This document shows positions 21,235 to 31,545 of a stretch of 64,000 nt of DNA, piece by piece; the stretch's first letter is position 1; the number at the start of each line of letters is the position of its first letter. Made by a program: the position numbers and the translations under genes. The stretch is from Anaeramoeba ignava BMAN (Eukaryota; Protista; Anaeramoebae): positions 1-64,000 of the forward strand of contig JAPDFW010000076.1 in NCBI GenBank assembly GCA_028826165.1, given 5' to 3'. The notes beneath the pieces were generated by a model. The model did no database searches and was not told the origin of the DNA. It saw nothing but the letters and a program-made list of their open reading frames with translations.

Positions 21235-24200
21235 TTAAATTGTTTTTCTTTTCTTTAACAAAATTGTTAATTGTCTTTTTGATAAATTTTGAGGAGTTTT
21301 ACATTCTTTAATCACTTTTTTCTTTGATAAAGCTTCATCCTCTTCATTTCCCAATTCAGAATCAGATTCAGATTCAGATTGAGATTGAGTTAAAGTTAAA
21401 AATATTTTTTCAGAATCAAAATTGGTTTTTTTTCTTTTTGATTTTTTTTTGGAAGAATTTTTTCTCAAAATTGAATCATCATTTTCAATTTGATTTTTTA
21501 AGAAATTTTGAAAAGGAATCATTTCATTAACAAAATTGCGAATTTTTTCATCTGATTTTTTTTGAGATAAAAAATCAATTTTAATTTGTTGGAAATCATC
21601 ATCACTTTCAAGACTAATAAATTTATCATTTATTTTTAAATTTCCGTTAAGATTAACGTCAAAAGCTTGTAAAAAATTAAACCAAGGACCGTAATCAATT
21701 GATTCAGAAAGAATATTTGAAAAGAAAAATTCTTCGTTTGTATTTTTGCTTATCAAGTAATAAAAATAAACTGAATGATTTTGTTTTAATCCTAAGCATT
21801 TATTTTCCGCTCGAAGCATTAATTTTGGATTCCAGTTGATTTCTGTAAAAATTACAAGTGTTGCTGAACTTGGAAACATAATCGGTAATTGATTGAGCGA
21901 AATGCTCGCAATTTTTATTGTTTGATCTTCTTCAAATTTTGAAAGTTTTTTTCTTCTTTCTTCCTTTTTTTCTTCTTCAAAAATCACAATGTGTTTTTTT
22001 TGTGAATTTTCTAAATAATTTCTTACTGTTTCTTTTATAATCTCGTTGCTTGTGAAAATTATGCATTTTCTGTTTGGAAAGTTTGATGTTATTTTATCAA
22101 TTAAATTTGGAATATATTTTTTTTTCTGGTTCGAAATTTCATGTGAAAATTGTATTAAATTTTCGTTAAAATGTGGATCAGAAACATCAAGTTGTTTCTG
22201 TTGATTTTCTTCTTTTGTGTTTTCGTTTGTGTTTTCTGTCGTGAAAAAATAAGGAATTCGATAATGAGGTTGTAAATGGTTTTTTCTCTGAATCCAATTT
22301 TTCTCGCCATTTTCTGCAATTATGCAATTTTGTTTCAGAAAATCTTCATATTTTGTTGAATTGAAAAAAAGTGAACTAAAAAGCTCCAAATTTTCATATT
22401 CATTTGGAAACAATAACTCAAATTGTGGGAATAATTTTTCTGCTTCTGTGATTGTTTTTTGATCTGAAAGAACAATTTTGCGAGTTGAATTAGTCAATGT
22501 TTTTTCAATTATTTTCAGTGAATTTCCAACATCAAAAGCTGGCAAATTTGTTCCATCAAAAACAACAAAATGGAAAGAAATCCCATCAAATATTTCTGTT
22601 AATTTTGACGTCGTTTCTTTGTTCAAAATTAATGTTGTTGATAATATTGTGATTGCTTTTGTTTTTTCAAATTGCTCCAGATTGTTTGGGTGAATAAGAA
22701 TATTAATTGATAAATTGGTGTCAAATAAAAGCCAGTTTTCAAAAGCAAGTTCCCAACCAAAACATCTTTTTCTTGAGCAAATGATTAAAATATTTGTGTC
22801 TTTTTCAAAGTGATTTATGATTGACATAATTTGTAATGTATTGTGACCAAGAACACAATCAAAAAAGTAATTTTCTTGTTCTTGAATTGATAAGTCATAA
22901 ACAAAATCATCGTGGTTTTTTGTGATTGATTTTTCTACTTGAATCCAACAATATTTTTTTTCTTTAAATTCTTCTTTTTTCAATTTGGAAATTCCAATTT
23001 TATCGAAATAACTCAAAATACTTTTTTTGTTTGAAATGCAAACATTATATTCTTTTTGATTTGAAAATTTTGATATTTTCTTTTGCTTTTTTGATAAAAT
23101 TCCAAACCCAGCTAATACAAAAATAAATTGTTCAGCAATTTTCCCATTTGGAAATGAAAAATTAATTGATATGAATTCTTTGGCATTTGTATTCTTAGTA
23201 AAAGTGCAAATTGAACCACAAAGCTCAAATAAAATTTGAATAAAGTTGATCATCAGATCAAGCTCTGAAATGAGGAAATTTAATGGAATTTCTTTTTCAT
23301 TTGAGCAAACACCAAACTTATATCCATGATGAATAAGTAAATCAACGTATTCTTTTGATGAAATTTCCACAAAATTTTGATCAATTAATAAATGCGATTT
23401 TTTACAGTTTTGAGAATGGTTTTGTGGATTTTTTGAAGGAAGTAATAATTTGTGGAAATGAAGAACAAAATTTTCTTTTGATTTTTGATTTGGAAAGCTA
23501 AATTGAGATTTAAAATGTTGAATATTTTCCTCAACTGCAAATAAAAAATGATTAACCATTAAGTAAACTAATGATATTTTGGGAAAAGAAGGATTGATTC
23601 GAGAGGAATCCGATATGCTTGAATTTTGGATTTTGTTCCAAAAATTCAACGAGAAAAGTACTTTATCTTTGTTTGAAATTTGGGATGCTCTTTTCCATCC
23701 GTTTGGAGTTAATAGCTTATGTTTGAGGGATGTTTTAAGTGTAATTCCATTTGAAAGGGTTGTTTTTCGAATTTTAAATGTTTTTTCTCGGTAAATTGCT
23801 GTAATTTCTTGGAATTTGATCTGGTTATTTTGGTTGAATGCAAGAATCTTTAAATTCTCTTTTCCTGTTTTCTGGATAGGTTTATACCATTCTCCATTAT
23901 CAAGATCAATAACTTTTGATTTTGAATAAATGAATTGATTAAATAATGTTTGAATGGAAAAAATTCCATAGTTTGTCATCAAAAGAGATTTTCCATGGAT
24001 ACATTTTCCTGGGATAGAATCATCTGCAAGTATTATTTTGCTGTTTTCTTGTGAGATTGCTTTCTCAACTCTTTTTGTTTGTGATGAAGTGAGGAATGTA
24101 CTTAATTTTTCTTGTATTTCTTTTCTTTTTTGGGTTTTGGAGTGGAATTCTGTTATTCTTTTCAATTCTTCATATTCAATTTCTTGGATTTCAATATTTA

Positions 24201-27200
24201 TTTGATTGTTTTGCTGCTGGAAATTTTTAAGAGAATTAAGAATTTGATTATAAATTTGAAAAGAGAATTGGATTGAATTTGGAAATTGGTTTGATCTTTG
24301 TATTTCATATTCTTCCAAAAATGTTTTAATTTGTAATATATCTTCTGAACTTGTCAATTCAATAGTATCCTCATTTTTGATTGAGAAATGAAGAGTAATT
24401 TGGTTTAAATTATTATTACTATTATTTTCAAATGAAGAAATTTGAAGTTGTTTTAATTTTTGGTTTTGAGAATGTAGTTGATTGTTTGTGTGCTCCATTT
24501 CTTGCTGTTTTATATTTGGTTGGTTATTAAGATTTAAGAGGTTTTGGATTCGATTTTGAGAATTATTTAAAAGAGCATGAAAATTTGGGGATATTTGCGA
24601 GTTTTGAGATAAATTTGATGTAATTTTTGGATTAATTTTTTGGTTTAAGTAGATGAATCTAGCCTGCTTTTGAGATTGAGATTCAATTTGATTTATATTT
24701 TGATTTATATTTTGATTTATATCTTGATTTATATTTTGATTTATATTTTGATTTATATTTTCATTGTTTTGATTTATATTTTGATTTATATTTTCATTTA
24801 TATTTTCATTTATATTTTGATTTATATTTTGATTTATATTTTGATTTATATTTTGATTTATATTTTGATTTATATTTTGATTTATATTTTGATTTATATC
24901 TTGATTTATATTTTGATTTATATTTTGATTCATATCTTCATTTATATTTTGATTTATATTTTCATTGTTTTCATTTATATTTTGATTTATATTTTCATTT
25001 ATATTTTCATTTATATTTTCATTTATATTTTTGATTTATATTTTGATTTATATTATTTTATATTTTATATCTTCATTTATATTTTCATTTATATTTTGAT
25101 TTATATTTTGATTTATATTTTGATTTATATTTTGATTTATATTTTGATTTATATTTTCATTTATATTTTGATTTATATTTTGATTTATATTTTGATTTAT
25201 ATTTTGATTTATATTTTCATTTATATTTTGATTTATATCTTCATTTATATTTTCATTTATATTTTGATTTATATCTTCATTTATATTTTGATTTATATTT
25301 TGATTGTTTTCATTTATATTTTGATTTGTGTTTTCATTGTTTTCATTTATGATTTGTATTTGAGATTGATATGGAGATTTATATTGAGAATGATGTTGAG
25401 ATTGATGTTGAGATTGATTTATATTTTGTATTTGAGATTTATTTTGAGATTTATATTGAGTTTTATTTATATTTTGTATTTGAGATTGATGTTGAGATTG
25501 ATGTTGAGATTGATGTTGAGATTGATGTTGAGAATGATGTTGAGATTGATTTATATTTTGTATTTGAGATTGATGTTGAGATTGATGCTGAGATTTATAT
25601 TGAGATTGATGTTGAGATTTATATTGAGTTTTATTTATATTTTGTATTTGGGATTGATATGGAGATTGATGTTGAGATTGATGATAAGATTGATGTTGAG
25701 ATTGATTTATATTTTGTATTTGGGATTTATTTATATTTTGTATTTGGAATGATTCCTCTTTCTGATTCTTATTCAATATTGATGTGTTTTGATTTTCAGA
25801 ATTTAGATTAAATTGATCCATTACATTTTTTTGAGAAGAATTAGAAGTAATTGGGATTAATGGAGTTTTTTGAATATTTAAAGGATTTAGATTATTATTT
25901 ATATTATTATTTAAATTATTATTTATATTATTATTTAGATTATTATTTAGATTATTATTTAGATTATTATTTAGATTATTATTTATATTATTATTTAAAT
26001 TATTATTTAGATTATTATTTAAATTATTATTTAAATTATTATTTAAATTATTATTTAGATTATTAATTATTATTTATATTATTATTTAAATTATTATTTA
26101 TATTATTATTTAGATTATTATTTAAATTATTATTTAGATTATTATTTAAATTATTATTTAGATTATTATTTAGATTATTATTTATATTATTATTTAAATT
26201 ATTATTTATATTATTATTTAGATTATTATTTAGATTATTATTTAGATTATTATTTAGATTATTATTTAGATTATTATTTAAATTATTATTTAGATTATTA
26301 TTTAAATTATTATTTAAATTATTATTTAAATTATTATTTAAATTATTATTTATATTATTATTTAGATTATTATTTATATTATGATTTATATTATTATTGT
26401 TGAAGCTCTTGACAGTTTTCAAATTGCTTAAAGTTGTAATTTTTGGAAAACTTGAAAAACTTGGAAAACTATTAAATTTATTCAAATTATTTTCATTTAA
26501 TTTATTGAATTGATATAATTTTTGATTTTGATTTTGATTTTGATTTTGATTTTGATTTTGATTTTGATTTTGATTTTGATTTTGATTTTGATTTTGATTT
26601 TGATTTTGATTTTGATTTTGATTTTGATTTTGATTTTGATTATTGAATTGATATAATTTTTGATTTTGGTTTTGGTTTTGGTTTAAATGATTTAATTTTA
26701 AAGGTTGATTCAAATTTGGATTGAGTTGATTCAAATTTGGATTGAGTTGATTTAATTTTAAAGGTTGATTTAATTTTAAAGGTTGATTCAAATTTGGATT
26801 GAGCTGATTTAATTTTAAAGGTTGATTTAAATTGGGATTGAGTTGATTTAATTTTAAAGGTTGATTTAAATTTGGATTAAATTGATTTAAATTCAGATTT
26901 AAATTATTTGGATTGAATTGATTTAAATTTAAATTATGTTGAGTAAAATTATATAGTTTTATTTTGTTTTGAGGAAATTTATCAACATTTTGTTGATTAA
27001 CATAATTAGGAAGAGGTTTTATATTATTAGAAAAATTTTGAATAGAAGGAAATAAATTAATTGAAGAAGAATTTGAAGAAAAAGAATTTTCTCCAAATTT
27101 TTCAATAGAATTTTCTTTTGAATCATTATTTATTTTCGATGGAGAATTTTGGAAAGTTGTATTTTGAGTTGAATTTGAATTTTCAATTGGATTTGTATTT

Positions 27201-27379
27201 GAATTTTTATTTTTATTTGAATCTGTATTTGTATTTGAATTTGAATTTGAAAAATTATTTTGAGAAAGAAAATTATTATTTAAAGTATTGCATTGAATTT
27301 GAATATTATAATAACAAGGACTTGATGTAAGTTGATTATTTTGTTCTTTTTGTGTTTTTTTATTTAAAGGATTTTGCAT
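21235..27379 (-). CDS. SMARCAL1/HARP-like SNF2-family protein with a long N/Q-rich N-terminus, degenerate ATPase motifs and an intein; ORFs 27379-26063, 25821-25048 and 24933-21235 are probably one gene broken by indels in repeats
   Basis: HARP-like segment (~24402-24175, QFSFQIYNQILNSLK..INIEI). Motif I ILADD..GK|TLQ; motif Ia LIICS..FGWE..F..WL. C-lobe KCIIFT, ERRKKLSKFEED..IASISL, SATLVIFTEINWNPKLMLRAENKC..QNHSVYFYYLISKNTNEE, matching the SMARCAL1 pattern. Confidence 0.8.
22840..24003 (-). mobile_element. Intein (388 aa) with degenerate LAGLIDADG homing endonuclease, inserted in Walker A of the SNF2-like host
   Basis: Block A CIHGKSLLMTNYG (Cys1 at 24003-24001); block B ITLKTSLKHKLLTPNGWKRASQI; endonuclease remnants VYLMVNHFLFA, KEIP, FIQILFELCGSI, FVLAGFGI, YFDKIG; block F VYDLSI; block G GHN followed by Thr+1. 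Excision restores ILADDSIPGK-TLQ. Confidence 0.95.
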
Positions 27380-28044
27380 TTATTTAATTTAAATATGTTT
27401 AAAAAAAATGAATTAAATTTTTTTAATTTTTTTGTTTTTAAATTTTTAATTTAATTTTTTGTTTTTCAAAAACATTAAAAAAAAGTTTTAAAAAAAAATA
27501 ATTTTTTTTAATTGATCATTTTGAAATTAAAATTTTTAAAATTAAAAACAAAAACAAATTTGAAATTAAAAACAAAAACAAAAACAAATTTTGAAATTAA
27601 AATTAAAATTAAAATTGAAATTAAAAACAAAATTAAATTCAAAATTAAAATTAAAATTAAAATTAAAATTAAAATTAAAATTGAAATTGAAATTAAAATT
27701 GAAATTAAAATTGAAATTAAAATTAAAATTAAAATTAAATTGAAATTAAAATTGAAATTAAAACAAAAACAAAATTAAAATTCATTTATAAAATTAAAAT
27801 TAAAATTAAATTAAAATTTAAAATGAAATTAAAAAAAAATTAAAAAAATTAAAATTATAAAATTAAAATTAAAATTGAAATTGAAAACAAAAACAAATTT
27901 TGAAATTAAAATTTGAAATTGAAATTGAAATTAAAATTGAAATTAAAAACAAAAACAAATTTTGAAATTAAAATTGAAATTAAAATTGTTTAATCATTTA
28001 TTCTTTTTATCTCTAAATAAAATTATAAGAAAAAAATTTTTTTA

Positions 28045-29399
28045 TCAATAAAATGTTGTTGAAAAATTTTGTTTTTGAAACTTTTTCTCTCTTTCTGTTT
28101 TTCTTTTAATTTTTAAAATCTTCTTATTTTCTTGGAAATAACTTTTTAATATTTTTTTCTCTTTTGGTTTAATTCTTAAAATTTCATAATCAAAAAGTTG
28201 TTTAAAAAATAGGTTATTTTCTAATTGAAATTGTAAACCTGAATCAAAAATCATTTTCAAAAAATTAAACTGAATAATTTTATGCCATTTTTTGATCTTA
28301 ATTGGATTTGATTTAATTGTAATTTTTAAAGAAGGAAAAATAAGATTTTCAATTGAATCCAAAACTTGATTGAATCTTTCTCGAATTTCTTTTGCATATT
28401 GATTAGTGATTCTATCTTTTTTGTGGTCAATAAAACTTGATTGTTCAATTGCTTGCAATACATTTTTTCTTAATGTTTTTGTTGTTGGGAATTTTTTGTC
28501 TTCAAAAAAGGAATCTTGAATAAAAAATAAAAGTGCCACATTTTCTGTTATTGCTATCTTTGTGTCTGGAAGATCTTTTTGCAAAAATTGCAAATGAATA
28601 TTCATTAAATAATCATATAACATCATATTTGCGTCTTCATGTTCGTGCTTTATGTGTGTTTGAATGGGGAAATGTTTGCTTTCTTTTGATAATAAAATCC
28701 TGTCAAAAAATTCTTCTTTTGTTTCAATAATAAAATAACTTGGTATGCTTGATATAATTAGCCCAATTCCTTCAAATAATGATTGTATGGTTTTGATATG
28801 TTGGTTTTGTGTTTCTGTTTTTGTTATTTCTTCAATTTGTTCAAGAATAAAATTCATGCATTCTAATCCAACTTCGTAATTTTGATTAAAAGAGAAAAGA
28901 AATCCTAAAAGAGAAATAGCCTTGATTGCCTTTTTATTTTTTGATAGAACAAAGAAATGAAGAATGTTAGAATTTATATTAATAATTAATTTAAATAAAA
29001 ATAAATAAAAATTAAAAAATCGGAAAAAATTTTAAAATCGGAAAAAATTTTTACTTGTGAAGAAAGTTCTTCGTTTTTTCTTTCAAGAATAAATTTAGAT
29101 AATTCAACATGAAATTGTTCAAAAAGAAAAGAAGTTTGTTCTACAAAAATAACGGAAATTAATTGAATTAATTGGATTGTTTTTAATTTTTCAATTAAAT
29201 TTGATTTCTTTAAGATTTTTAATAAATTTGATGTTAAAGTTTCAAAATAATCAGTTAAAGTTGGATCTTGATCGATCTTAAAAAATTCAATTAAATTGTC
29301 AATATCATTCATTCTTTTGGTTTTATTTCTAATTGAAAGTGATTCTATTGTTTCTTTTAATTGTTCTGTTGTTTTTATTGATTTTTTTTGTTGTTTCAT
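28045..29399 (-). CDS. Interferon-related developmental regulator (IFRD1/2-like, ribosome-hibernation factor family); exons 29399-29055 and 28929-28045
   Basis: LKETIESLS..KTKR..TLTSNLLKILKKS..E; RERFNQVLDSIE..FP; W..QFNFLK..FDSGLQFQLENNLFFKQLF, which fit IFRD and IFRD_C patterns. The GT-AG intron is in phase. Confidence 0.7.
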
Positions 29400-29594
29400 T
29401 TTCTGTTCTAAAATCTAAAAAAAATTTATTTATTTTTTTATTTATAAAAGGAAAAAAATTTAAGTAAAAAAATTTATAAAGAAAAAATTGTAAATAAAAG
29501 AAAAAAAAAATGAAAAAAAAAATTTATTTTAATTTTCTTTTTAAATTCCCCTTTTTTATTTAGATGACGTCATTTATTAAAAAAAAGAGAACAA

Positions 29595-31545
29595 CAATAA
29601 AATTAAATCTAAATTAAATTTTAAATTAATTTCCTAATTAATTAATAAATCAAAATTAATTTAATTTTTATATATTTTTATATTTAAATTTATTATTAAA
29701 TTTATTATCATTATTTTTAATTACAAATATTTATTTAATAAAATAAAATTAAATCTAAATTAAATTTTAAATTAATTTCCTAATTAATTAATAAATCAAA
29801 ATTAATTTAAATTTTAATATTTTTATATTTAAATTTATTATTAAATTTATTATCATTATTTTTATTTATAATTATTTATTTAATAAAATGAATTAAATCT
29901 AAATTAAATTTTAAATTAATTTCCTAATTAATTAATGAAATCAAAAATTAATTTAGAGATTTTTATATTTTATATTTAAATTTATTATTAAATTTATTAT
30001 CATTATTTTTAATTATAAATATTTATTTAATAAAATAAAATTAAATCTAAATTAAATTTTAAATTAATTTCATAATTGATTAATAAATCAAAAATTAATT
30101 TAGATATTTATATTTTTATATTTAAATTTATTATTAAATTTATTATCATTATTTTTATTTATAATTATTTATTTAATAAAATAAAATTAAATCTAAATTA
30201 AATTTTAAATTAATTTCCTAATTAATTAATAATTCAAAATTAATTTAATTTTTATATTTTTATATTTAAATTTATTATCATTATTTTTATTTATAAATAT
30301 TTATTTAATAAAATAAAATTAAATCTAAATTAAATTTTAAATTAATTTTCTAACTGATTAATAAATCAAAATTAATTTTAATTTTTATATTTTTATATTT
30401 AAATTTATTATTAAATTTATTATCATTATTTTTATTTATAATTATTTATTTAATAAAATAAAATTAAATCTAAATTAAATTTTAAATTAATTTTTAACTA
30501 ATTAATAAATCAAAATTAATTTAATTTTTAATATTTTTATATTTAAATTTATTATTAAATTTATTATCATTATTTTATTTATAATTATTTATTTAATAAA
30601 AATAAAATTAAATCTAAATTAAATTTTAAAATTAATTTCCTAACTAATTAATAATTCAAAATTAATTTAGATATTTATATTTTATATTTAAATTTATTAT
30701 TAAATTTATTATCATTATTTTTATTTATAATTATTTATTTAATAAAATGGAATTAAATCTAAATTAAATTTTAAATTAATTTCCTAATTAATTAATAAAT
30801 CAAAATTAATTTAATTTTTATATTTTTATATTTAAATTTATTATTAAATTTATTATCATTATTTTTAATTATAAATATTTATTTAATAAAATAAAATTAA
30901 ATCTAAATTAAATTTTAAATTAACAACTAATTAATTAATAAATCAAAATTAATTTATATATTTATATTTTTATATTTAAATTTATTATTAAATTTATTAT
31001 CATTATTTTTAATTATAAATATTTATTTAATAAAAATAAAATTAAATCTAAATTAAATTTTAAATTAATTTCCTAACTAATTAATAAATTCAAAATTAAT
31101 TTAGATATTTATATTTTTATATTTAAATTTATTATTAAATTTATTATCATTATTTTTATTTATAAATATTTATTTAATAAAATAAAATTAAATCTAAATT
31201 AAATTTTAAATTAATTTTGTAATTAATTAATAAATCAAAATTAATTTAATTTTTAATATTTTTATTTAAATTTATTATTAAATTTATTATCATCATTTTT
31301 ATTTATAATTATTTATTTAATAAAATAAAATTAAATATAAATTAAATTTTAAATTAATTTTTTAACTAATTAATAAATCAAAATTAATTTAAATTTTAAT
31401 ATTTTTATATTTAAATTTATTATTAAATTTATTATCATTATTTTAATTATAAATATTTATTTAATAAAATAAAATTAAATCTAAATTAAATTTTAAATTA
31501 ATTTTTTAATTAATTAATAAATCAAAATTAATTTAATTTTTTATA
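29595..31545. repeat. Tandem satellite, ~145-bp monomer, ~14 copies, almost pure A/T
   Basis: Anchor AAATCTAAATTAAATTTTAAATTAA recurs at ~29605, 29751, 29896, 30043, 30189, 30321, 30466, 30610, 30755, 30899, 31044, 31190, 31333 (variant) and 31477. Confidence 0.95.

What the first reader, a model, noticed from the sequence alone, without database searches (positions are those of the whole stretch)
22460..24045. The intein's host looks like a catalytically dead SNF2 pseudo-ATPase, so why keep splicing?
Seen in sequence: Walker A reads ADDSIPGKT (canonical ADDMGLGKT), Walker B reads VVFDGTN (canonical DE[S/A]H), motif III reads LSDQK (canonical LSGTP) and motif VI reads RAENKCLGLKQ (canonical QAEDRxHRIGQ). 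All splicing nucleophiles are nevertheless retained. Established: inteins normally persist because they sit in essential catalytic motifs. Inference: the host works as a non-enzymatic HARP/scaffold protein that still needs excision to fold. Alternatively, the intein has been domesticated as a conditional (for example Cys-redox/oxygen-sensitive) switch, or as a released DNA-binding protein. A pseudoenzyme plus a domesticated intein would be an undescribed regulatory system.
Basis: partly seen in the sequence, partly recalled or inferred. Interest (0 to 1): 0.8.

Follow-up and report, generated by a model that had tools for sequence, protein, structure and literature searches.

The report
Motif-dead SMARCAL1 paralogue keeping its intein
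This gene is an old, fast-evolving duplicate of the genome's normal intein-containing SMARCAL1 DNA-remodelling enzyme; the duplicate has lost almost every ATPase motif but still has an open reading frame and an intact-looking intein, which inheritance explains without any new regulatory system.

Summary
A 1232-codon minus-strand ORF (21235-24933) encodes an SNF2/SMARCAL1-derived protein. A 388-aa intein (22840-24003) splits its P-loop between GK and T.

The host motifs are eroded:
- Motif I: IPGK|T
- Motif II: DGTN
- Motif III: SDQK
- Motif VI: NK..LG
- Motifs Ia, IV and V and the HARP domain are also eroded.

The intein keeps Cys1, the block-B His, the terminal His-Asn and Thr+1.

The puzzle mostly goes away with one new fact. 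The same genome is almost certainly Anaeramoeba, whose SMARCAL1 intein was published in 2023. It carries a canonical paralogue on another contig with GLGK|T, DESH, SGTP and QAEDRAHRIGQ. That paralogue has a homologous intein (36-37% identity) at the same site. The window gene is therefore a diverged duplicate that inherited its intein.

Of 79 family-conserved columns it keeps 31, against 74 in the paralogue. Its branch is about ten times longer. It has no stop in 1232 codons, where neutral decay predicts 13-40 stops per 420 codons. So it is probably a selected, non-hydrolysing protein that still needs splicing to be contiguous.

Nothing supports a domesticated or redox-switch intein. I could obtain no expression data and no orthologues. 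The scan had already noted the paralogue's intein on other DNA of this genome.

The parts
21235..24933 (-). Whole ORF: 1232 codons plus stop, with no internal stop or frameshift. It encodes the SMARCAL1-derived precursor protein with its intein.
   Evidence: The neutral-decay simulation expects 13-40 stops per 420 codons at this divergence.
24679..24933 (-). N-terminal low-complexity NINQ-type repeat (aa 1-85).
   Evidence: read from the translation
24154..24411 (-). Eroded HARP-like region (aa 175-260). It is collinear with the paralogue's HARP domain but no longer detectable by profile.
   Evidence: 26% identity and 54% positives to the paralogue; hhalign probability 0.5%, against 93% for the paralogue. 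No Pfam hit.
24004..24027 (-). N-terminal part of motif I (Walker A), ADDSIPGK. The first Gly of GxGKT is replaced by Ile and Leu by Pro. The Lys is retained and is the -1 residue of the intein.
22840..24003 (-). Intein, 388 aa (aa 311-698), running from Cys1 to the terminal His-Asn.
   Evidence: Pfam Intein_splicing 48.2 bits. 36-37% identical to the paralogue's intein at the same site.
23644..24003 (-). Intein N-terminal splicing region (blocks A and B; Cys1; SLKH at nt 23719-23730).
   Evidence: alignment to the Ssp DnaB mini-intein; 43% identity to the paralogue's intein.
22969..23643 (-). LAGLIDADG-type endonuclease-like insert. Motif 1 is ..AVEEN (nt 23524-23547). Motif 2 is ..LCGSI (nt 23209-23232), where Cys occupies the place of the catalytic Asp, in both paralogues.
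   Evidence: Pfam LAGLIDADG_3 is below threshold at 19.6 bits. Alignment. 31% identity to the paralogue.
22840..22968 (-). Intein C-terminal splicing region (block F YDLSI; block G ..VLGHN).
   Evidence: (42% identity)
22837..22839 (-). Thr+1. It is the C-extein nucleophile and also the Thr of Walker A GKT.
21634..22839 (-). C-extein helicase core (aa 699-1100): two RecA-like lobes with every catalytic motif eroded.
   Evidence: E 1.6e-16 and 25% identity to the paralogue; 769 family hits, the best at 26% identity; 31 of 79 conserved columns kept; predicted fold matches SNF2 ATPase cores.
22546..22557 (-). Motif II (Walker B), DGTN in place of DESH. The Asp is kept and the catalytic Glu is replaced by Gly.
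22456..22470 (-). Motif III, LSDQK in place of LSGTP.
21862..21909 (-). Motif V region, ISLNQLPI.. in place of LSITAAG.G.
21781..21813 (-). Motif VI, RAENKCLGLKQ in place of QAEDRAHRIGQ. Both arginines are lost (Arg to Lys, Arg to Gly).
21238..21633 (-). C-terminal tail (aa 1101-1232) with a basic cluster (nt 21427-21450) and an acidic Ser/Glu-rich stretch (nt 21331-21384). Reading these as a nuclear localisation signal is inference only.
   Evidence: read from the translation

Best explanation
The window gene is an old duplicate of the organism's canonical, intein-containing SMARCAL1/HARP annealing helicase. The organism is almost certainly Anaeramoeba.

The duplicate inherited the intein that sits between Lys and Thr of the Walker A GKT. 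After duplication the host part evolved about ten times faster than its sister. It lost the HARP signature and the residues needed for ATP hydrolysis and for coupling hydrolysis to DNA. These are the motif II Glu, motifs III and V, and both motif VI arginines.

The reading frame stayed open over all 1232 codons, and the two-lobe RecA-like architecture is still recognisable. So the product is most likely a non-hydrolysing pseudo-ATPase. It may still bind nucleotide or DNA and has some non-catalytic role. That role is inferred, not shown.

The intein persists for ordinary reasons:
- It can only be lost by an exact in-frame deletion.
- As long as any function of the contiguous host protein is selected, every splicing residue stays under selection.
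- The GK|T junction residues are probably preserved as -1/+1 splicing context at least as much as for nucleotide binding.
No domestication of the intein is needed.

Shown: homology, motif loss, the paralogue, the open frame, and conservation of intein residues.
Inferred: loss of ATPase activity, actual splicing, selection for a non-catalytic function, and duplication rather than ancient homing.
For: 1. Canonical paralogue in the same genome, G000:C39 (L017:2981-7912, 1643 aa).
- It has ADDMGLGK|C...HN|T, DESH, LLSGTP and QAEDRAHRIGQ.
- Pfam SNF2-rel_dom 101.5 bits and Helicase_C 51.2 bits.
- Its C-extein is 40% identical to vertebrate SMARCAL1, E 1e-84.
- Its HARP region matches the profile at 93% probability.

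2. Homologous intein at the same site.
- E 5.4e-36 and 37% identity.
- It is the only other match to this intein in the genome.
- The exteins are collinear.

3. Erosion quantified.
- Of 79 columns at least 85% conserved in 85 SMARCAL1/ZRANB3 homologues, the window copy keeps 31 and the paralogue 74.
- Terminal branch is about 10, against 1.03 for the paralogue and a median of 0.53.
- SNF2-rel_dom is not detected and Helicase_C is below threshold.

4. The intein is not eroded.
- The Intein_splicing score is the same in both copies, 48.2 and 47.0 bits.
- The splicing parts are the best-conserved parts of the gene between the paralogues, at 42-43% identity. The helicase lobes are at 24-28%.
- All nucleophiles and the block-B His are present.

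5. The open frame is not chance.
- Substitution-only neutral decay of the paralogue's 420 helicase codons to 30% identity gave 13-40 stops, mean 26, in 200 runs.
- The window copy has 0 stops in 1232 codons.
- GC1 > GC2 > GC3 holds in all parts.

6. The fold is retained. The AlphaFold2 model of the C-extein has pLDDT 74.5, and the best PDB matches are SNF2 ATPase cores at E 1e-16.

7. Context.
- The genome has at least 38 Intein_splicing matches.
- PMC10710043 reports 45-103 nuclear inteins in Anaeramoeba, a HARP/SMARCAL1 host among them, and duplicated extein-plus-intein regions.
Against: - No RNA or protein evidence.
- No orthologue of the dead copy could be reached. The protein libraries appear to hold no Anaeramoeba proteins at all. 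So purifying selection rests only on the open frame and on retained fold-level similarity, not on dN/dS.
- Loss of ATPase activity is inferred from motifs. The Lys and Thr of the P-loop and the Walker B Asp remain.
- The structure model was built from an alignment of true SNF2 proteins and so leans towards that fold.
- The tree cannot place so long a branch reliably. An ancient lateral origin, or ancient homing between paralogues rather than duplication, is not excluded.
Confidence: 0.64

Rival explanations
1. Dying gene. The duplicate is functionally dead and on its way to becoming a pseudogene. The open frame and the intact intein residues are leftovers that have not yet been hit.
For: - The host is eroded everywhere, in the HARP region as well as in every ATPase motif.
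- The branch is very long.
- GARP residues fall to 10%, against 18% in the paralogue, consistent with drift towards AT-rich codons.
- There is no expression evidence.
Against: - At this divergence, neutral substitution alone predicts 13-40 stops per 420 codons. None occurs in 1232 codons of a genome with 20-27% GC here.
- The intein matches its family profile as well as the live copy's intein does.
- Similarity to the paralogue extends over the whole C-extein, residues 1-509 of 534, at E 1.6e-16.
Confidence: 0.12
2. The intein has been domesticated as a conditional switch (redox, oxygen or ssDNA) or as a released DNA-binding protein. The dead host and the intein together form a regulatory device.
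For: - Between the two paralogues the intein splicing parts are better conserved (42-43%) than the host lobes (24-28%).
- The endonuclease-like insert is kept at full length even though the catalytic Asp of its second motif is Cys.
- The organism is an anaerobe (PMC10710043, PMC11550330).
Against: - The same intein, with the same features and the same Asp-to-Cys change, sits in the catalytically intact paralogue. Nothing about it is therefore specific to the dead copy.
- The reversed conservation is fully explained by acceleration of the host, whose branch is about ten times longer.
- The +1 residue is Thr, so the known Cys1-Cys+1 disulfide trap is impossible.
- No cysteine other than Cys1 and the CGSI Cys is shared by the two inteins.
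- A released-intein function would not need 534 open C-extein codons.
Confidence: 0.06
3. Still an enzyme. The protein hydrolyses ATP with non-canonical residues, or acts as a nucleotide-dependent switch, and is simply a very fast-evolving SNF2 member.
For: - The P-loop Lys and Thr and the Walker B Asp are retained.
- The two-lobe fold is predicted.
- The frame is open.
Against: - The motif II Glu is Gly, and both motif VI arginines are lost (Lys and Gly).
- Motifs Ia, III, IV and V are all replaced.
- The first Gly of GxGKT is Ile, followed by Pro.
- All of the 30 best family hits that span motif II keep an intact DE[SC][HQ] box, and most show a canonical motif VI.
- From established knowledge of SF2 enzymes, these residues are required for hydrolysis.
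Confidence: 0.08
4. Not a duplication. The intein entered an already diverged paralogue by ancient homing, or the whole gene came in laterally (for example from a giant virus) with its intein.
For: - PMC10710043 reports intein spread between ancient paralogues and virus-mediated spread in Anaeramoeba.
- The intein (36-37%) is more similar between the copies than the extein (25%).
- The junction flank from -12 to -1 is 50% identical.
Against: - There is no conversion tract. Nucleotide identity at the junctions is only 46-65%.
- The second LAGLIDADG motif lacks its acidic residue in both copies, so the endonuclease was probably already inactive in their common ancestor.
- No viral or metagenomic relative of the intein was found.
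- The gene carries host-type low-complexity repeats.
- This rival changes only the history, not what the locus is.
Confidence: 0.1

Closest known systems
Anaeramoeba HARP/SMARCAL1 intein (Gallot-Lavallee et al., PNAS 2023, PMC10710043)
   Same: - Same host family, and a nuclear eukaryotic intein.
- The paper lists a HARP/SMARCAL1 insertion site shared by A. ignava and A. flamelloides, and mentions duplicated extein-plus-intein regions.
- The canonical copy on contig C39 of this genome fits that description.
   Different: - In its main text the paper does not describe a paralogue whose ATPase motifs are eroded. My searches for 'inactive' and 'pseudogen' found only statements about endonucleases and pseudogenised inteins.
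- Its supplementary tables were not available, so I cannot tell whether the window copy is in its list.
SMARCAL1 (HARP) and ZRANB3 annealing helicases
   Same: - These are the closest relatives of the window C-extein in an exhaustive search. They are HARP+SNF2 and SNF2+HNH proteins at 21-26% identity.
- Domain order is collinear with the paralogue, which is 40% identical to vertebrate SMARCAL1.
   Different: - The window copy fails Pfam SNF2-rel_dom and HARP.
- It lacks DExH, SGTP, and motifs V and VI.
- It carries an intein.
Bacterial and archaeal P-loop inteins, such as the DnaB helicase inteins (Ssp DnaB mini-intein, PDB 1mi8)
   Same: - A class-1 HINT splicing domain. Block B aligns to Ssp DnaB at E 1.7e-4.
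- Insertion in the nucleotide-binding site of a helicase.
   Different: - Those hosts are essential active enzymes.
- Here the host's active site has decayed around the intein.
Pseudoenzyme paralogues of active enzymes (general class: pseudokinases, inactive ATPase paralogues)
   Same: - A duplicate of an active enzyme that keeps the fold and an open frame but loses catalytic residues.
   Different: - No function, partner or expression is shown here.
- A literature search found no paper about an intein in a pseudoenzyme; the only paper listed for the two words concerns bacterial alarmone enzymes.

Membership tests
Intein (class 1, HINT splicing domain) | Splicing-domain profile match above the curated cut-off | tested here: met
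   Pfam PF14890: 43.5 bits on the whole protein and 48.2 bits on the intein alone, against a cut-off of 35.8.
Intein (class 1, HINT splicing domain) | Cys/Ser at position 1, block-B His, C-terminal His-Asn, and Cys/Ser/Thr at +1 | tested here: met
   Cys311, SLKH at aa 402-405 (aligned to TANH of Ssp DnaB), His697-Asn698 and Thr699.
Intein (class 1, HINT splicing domain) | In-frame insertion that interrupts an otherwise continuous conserved host motif | tested here: met
   Intein-less family homologues read G.GKT continuously. The window copy and its paralogue read GK | intein | T.
Intein (class 1, HINT splicing domain) | Demonstrated protein splicing | not testable with these tools
   Needs expression of the precursor or proteomics. 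PMC10710043 showed splicing for three other Anaeramoeba inteins only.
LAGLIDADG homing endonuclease (active) | Two LAGLIDADG motifs, each ending in a catalytic Asp/Glu | tested here: not met
   Motif 1 keeps Glu (..AVEEN). Motif 2 reads ..LCGSI, with Cys in the acidic position, in both paralogues. Pfam LAGLIDADG_3 scores 19.6 bits, below the 22.5 cut-off. The motif register was assigned by eye.
SNF2-family ATPase (active enzyme) | SNF2-rel_dom and Helicase_C profile matches | tested here: not met
   No PF00176 match. PF00271 scores 15.3-17.6 bits against a cut-off of 23.5. The genome-wide PF00176 scan finds the paralogue but not this locus.
SNF2-family ATPase (active enzyme) | Motif I GxGKT, motif II DExH, motif III S/T-G-T, motif VI QxxxRxxRxGQ | tested here: not met
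   IPGKT, DGTN, SDQK and RAENKCLGLKQ. 31 of 79 conserved columns are kept.
SNF2-family ATPase (descent / fold) | Significant sequence homology to SNF2 cores over both lobes, and a compatible fold | tested here: met
   E 1.6e-16 to the paralogue over residues 1-509. 769 library hits at E <= 1e-3. The model has pLDDT 74.5, with Foldseek E 1e-16 to the INO80, Mot1, CSB and ISWI cores. The model is biased by its alignment.
SMARCAL1 (HARP) subfamily | HARP domain upstream of the ATPase | tested here: not met
   No Pfam HARP hit. hhalign against a HARP profile gives probability 0.5% and E 0.11, against 93% and 2.9e-7 for the paralogue. Only positional collinearity remains.
Pseudoenzyme | Homologue of an active enzyme that lacks catalytic residues yet is kept by selection and expressed | tested here: inconclusive
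   Homology and residue loss are met. Selection is supported only by the open frame against a simulation. Expression could not be tested.

The most novel reading that the evidence does not exclude
The dead paralogue is a selected regulatory pseudo-ATPase, for example a nucleotide- or DNA-binding partner or antagonist of the live SMARCAL1. Its maturation is gated by its intein, so that splicing is conditional and the intein is co-opted. A weaker version: the intein has 'fossilised' the GK|T junction of a decayed active site. That would show directly that an intein imposes sequence constraint on its host independently of the host's catalysis.
Probability: 0.07. Interest if true: 0.75.

Novelty: new variant of a known kind. 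Interest (0 to 1): 0.38.

Why it matters
The textbook account says inteins survive because they sit in catalytic sites that cannot tolerate imprecise deletion. Here, within one genome, the same intein at the same P-loop site sits in one copy whose active site is intact and in one whose active site has decayed around it. That makes a natural control pair.

If the dead copy is expressed and spliced, it would show two things:
- Intein persistence needs only selection on host contiguity or fold, not on catalysis.
- The intein's own -1/+1 requirements can preserve remnants of a lost motif.

It would also be a rare example of a motif-dead SNF2-family protein.

The finding does not reveal a new regulatory system. 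The intein and its SMARCAL1 host family in this organism group are already published.

Tried and rejected
- **Orthologue hunt.** None of the searches below returned an orthologue. The word-indexed searches used the window C-extein and the intein:
  - Word-indexed protein search: one weak hit for the C-extein and none for the intein.
  - Exhaustive HMMER search of 1.84 billion representatives: best hit 26% identity, nothing below 1e-30, and no self hit.
  - Exact-sequence look-up of both ORFs: not in the collection.
  - Viral and metagenome contig scans with the two-intein alignment: nothing.
  - The canonical paralogue's search returned vertebrate and other SMARCAL1/ZRANB3 proteins but no Anaeramoeba protein. 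So these blanks say nothing about other Anaeramoeba species, and no dN/dS could be computed.
- **Expression.**
  - One run of unknown type holds the stretch, and it is not on record as RNA.
Nothing was laid, so no conclusion about transcription follows.
- **Intein structure.** AlphaFold2 with a two-sequence alignment gave pLDDT 34.8, which is unusable, so it was not searched.
- **Recent gene conversion or homing between the paralogues.** Rejected, because junction nucleotide identity is only 46-65%.
- **Loss of the Q-motif region.** MAFFT placed an 11-residue gap there, but an almost ungapped register that keeps a Gln is equally possible, so I make no claim.
- **Supplementary tables of PMC10710043.** Not held.
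- **Spliced extein.** I did not submit the conceptually spliced (joined) extein to any tool.
Full report
**1. What is there**

The window is extremely AT-rich, at 7-33% GC in 2-kb windows. It has the long Asn/Gln-rich coding repeats typical of an AT-rich protist. On the minus strand, 21235-24933 is a single 1232-codon ORF.

Reading the translation gives three pieces:
- An N-extein, aa 1-310, ending ..ADDSIPGK.
- A 388-aa insert, aa 311-698 (nt 22840-24003), beginning Cys-Ile-His and ending His-Asn.
- A C-extein, aa 699-1232, beginning Thr-Leu-Gln.

Pfam calls the insert an intein splicing domain:
- Intein_splicing scores 43.5 bits on the whole protein and 48.2 bits on the insert alone (cut-off 35.8).
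- There is a sub-threshold LAGLIDADG_3 match.
- On the host part it finds only sub-threshold Helicase_C and no SNF2 domain.

**2.

Motif VI lies at 21781-21813, outside the stated 22460-24045.

Their identification as degenerate SF2 motifs is confirmed by alignment:
- phmmer aligns the C-lobe to the Sulfolobus SNF2 core 1z63. This puts WNP...RAENKCLGLKQ under WNP...QATDRVYRIGQ.
- A 21-sequence family alignment places DGTN under DESH, SDQK under SGTP and FTSN under FAHH.
- The same alignment places ISLNQLPI under LSITAAG.G and IIAENGEK under MIRRLK.

Across 85 SMARCAL1/ZRANB3 homologues, 79 columns are at least 85% conserved. The window protein keeps 31 of them.

Three residues survive: the Lys and Thr of GKT and the Asp of Walker B. 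So what the sequence argues for is loss of hydrolysis and coupling, not necessarily loss of nucleotide binding.

The intein has everything a class-1 intein needs:
- Cys1.
- Block B, SLKH, aligned to TANH of the Ssp DnaB mini-intein.
- Block F, YDLSI.
- The terminal His-Asn.
- Thr+1.

**3. The key new fact: an intact paralogue with the same intein**

I searched the window's own assembly (42.8 Mb, 147 contigs) with the C-extein and with the intein. Each search finds exactly one other locus, on contig C39.

That ORF (L017:2981-7912, 1643 aa) reads:
- ..ADDMGLGK | Cys..intein..His-Asn | Thr-Leu-Gln..
- then DESH, LLSGTP and QAEDRAHRIGQ.

Further evidence that the C39 copy is canonical:
- SNF2-rel_dom at 101.5 bits and Helicase_C at 51.2 bits.
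- Its N-extein matches a HARP profile at 93% probability.
- Its C-extein is about 40% identical to vertebrate SMARCAL1, E 1e-84.
- It keeps 74 of the 79 conserved columns.

So the question 'does the genome have an intact paralogue?' is answered yes. That paralogue carries a homologous intein (36-37% identity, E 5e-36) at the identical site.

**4. Which organism, and what is published**

The genome holds at least 38 matches to the intein splicing profile at roughly thirty loci. That is unheard of for eukaryotes, with one exception.

A literature search for intein plus SMARCAL1 leads to Gallot-Lavallee et al. 2023 (PMC10710043). The paper reports:
- 45-103 nuclear inteins in three Anaeramoeba strains.
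- 'Chromatin remodeling protein HARP/SMARCAL1' named as a novel host class.
- That insertion site shared by A. ignava and A. flamelloides.
- Recent duplications of extein-plus-intein regions.

A. pumila is excluded, at 25.8 Mb and not AT-rich.

I regard the organism as almost certainly Anaeramoeba, probably A. ignava. The species is an inference.

The main text of the paper does not mention a paralogue with eroded ATPase motifs. Its supplementary tables were not available.

**5. How the two copies compare**

| Region (window vs C39) | Identity |
|---|---|
| Intein N-terminal splicing part | 43% |
| Intein C-terminal splicing part | 42% |
| Endonuclease-like insert | 31% |
| Helicase lobe 1 | 24% |
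| Helicase lobe 2 | 28% |
| HARP-like region | 26% |
| Twelve residues before the junction | 50% |

This ordering is the reverse of the usual one, in which the host is better conserved than the intein. The host explains it.
- In a maximum-likelihood tree the window C-extein has a terminal branch of about 10 substitutions per site. The paralogue's is 1.03 and the median is 0.53. The value is saturated and only says 'very long'.
- Meanwhile the two inteins match the Pfam splicing profile equally well, at 48.2 and 47.0 bits.

So the host has run away while the intein has not.

There is no sign of recent conversion or homing. Nucleotide identity at the junctions is 46-65%.

In both copies the second LAGLIDADG motif has Cys where the catalytic Asp should be (..CGSI). 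The endonuclease was therefore probably already inactive in their common ancestor. This favours duplication of a gene that already contained the intein, although ancient homing cannot be excluded.

**6. Is it a pseudogene?**

The HARP signature is gone as well (hhalign probability 0.5%).

Three results argue against it:
- I simulated substitution-only, AT-biased neutral decay of the paralogue's 420 helicase codons down to 30% identity. In 200 runs this produced 13-40 stop codons, mean 26. The window gene has none in 1232 codons.
- Codon-position GC keeps the coding order GC1 > GC2 > GC3 in the N-extein, the intein and the C-extein.
- Similarity to the paralogue runs across the whole core, E 1.6e-16 over residues 1-509.

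An AlphaFold2 model of the C-extein was built on the family alignment and is therefore biased towards the fold. It has pLDDT 74.5 and alternating strand-helix lobes. Its best PDB matches are the INO80, Mot1, CSB and ISWI ATPase cores at E about 1e-16.

The 534 open C-extein codons also argue against the idea that only the intein is the selected product. A released intein would need an open N-extein but not an open C-extein.

**7. Most likely mechanism**

The gene encodes a non-hydrolysing descendant of SMARCAL1 that is still selected as a contiguous two-lobe protein. The intein interrupts the first strand-loop-helix of lobe 1, so the protein cannot fold without splicing. That keeps all the splicing residues under selection.

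The intein itself cannot be removed except by an exact deletion. The surviving GK|T, in an otherwise dead P-loop, is at least as well explained by the intein's need for its +1 nucleophile and a tolerated -1 residue as by nucleotide binding.

What the protein does is not shown. Possibilities are DNA binding, nucleotide-dependent clamping, or partnering with the live paralogue. The basic and acidic clusters in the C-terminal tail suggest a nuclear protein, by inference only.

**8.

A redox switch of the known kind needs Cys at +1 or a conserved partner cysteine. Here +1 is Thr, and the two inteins share only Cys1 and the CGSI Cys. Nothing distinguishes the intein of the dead copy from that of the live copy. 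I find no evidence for domestication, but computation cannot exclude it.

**9. Limits**

- No expression evidence could be obtained. One run of unknown type holds the stretch.
- No orthologues could be reached. The protein collections seem to contain no Anaeramoeba proteins. Their silence is uninformative, and no dN/dS was possible.
- The intein structure prediction failed, at pLDDT 35.
- The conceptually spliced extein was never joined or submitted. The pieces were searched separately by reference.

**10. Verdict**

The intein and its host family are already published for this organism group. The new element is the pairing, within one genome, of a live copy and a motif-dead copy carrying the same P-loop intein. 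This is a modestly interesting natural experiment on why inteins persist. It is a new variant of a known kind, with interest about 0.4.

Noticed in passing
L017:2981-7912 (G000:C39, about 24980-29911): Canonical SMARCAL1 paralogue, 1643 aa, with a 393-aa intein at the same GK|T site. It has long NQ-rich and KLEN-type repeats at both ends. An earlier scan note (s1-686566) already covers its intein.
   Followed up: yes
window 23209-23232 and L017:4730-5908: In both paralogous inteins the second LAGLIDADG motif ends ..CGSI, with Cys in place of the catalytic Asp. The endonuclease-like domain is nevertheless kept at full length (31% identity between copies). It was probably inactive before the copies diverged.
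   Followed up: partly
G000, many contigs (e.g. C106:80258-82434, C71:176938-177976, C1:477918-479126): At least 38 Intein_splicing profile matches at about thirty loci in this nuclear genome. Several ORFs carry two matches. The pairs C12:70856-72313 / C93:325613-327052 and C17:750-1907 / C2:665739-666893 have near-identical or identical scores and look like recent duplicates of extein-plus-intein regions.
   Followed up: no
window 25048-25821 (-) and 26063-27379 (-): The ORFs just upstream of the gene consist almost entirely of NINQ, SQHQ and NLNN-type tandem amino-acid repeats. Overlapping ORFs on the opposite strand are artefacts of the repeats. It is unclear whether these are genes or coding-like satellites.
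   Followed up: no
G000 genome-wide, PF00176 scan: Only about seven loci match the SNF2 domain profile in a 42.8-Mb eukaryotic genome. This is a lower bound by the tool's own statement. One of them (C64:137750-138223) matches weakly at 36.5 bits inside an 1141-aa open frame and might be another divergent SNF2 member.
   Followed up: no
Nothing was laid, and the places were left alone afterwards.
   Followed up: no
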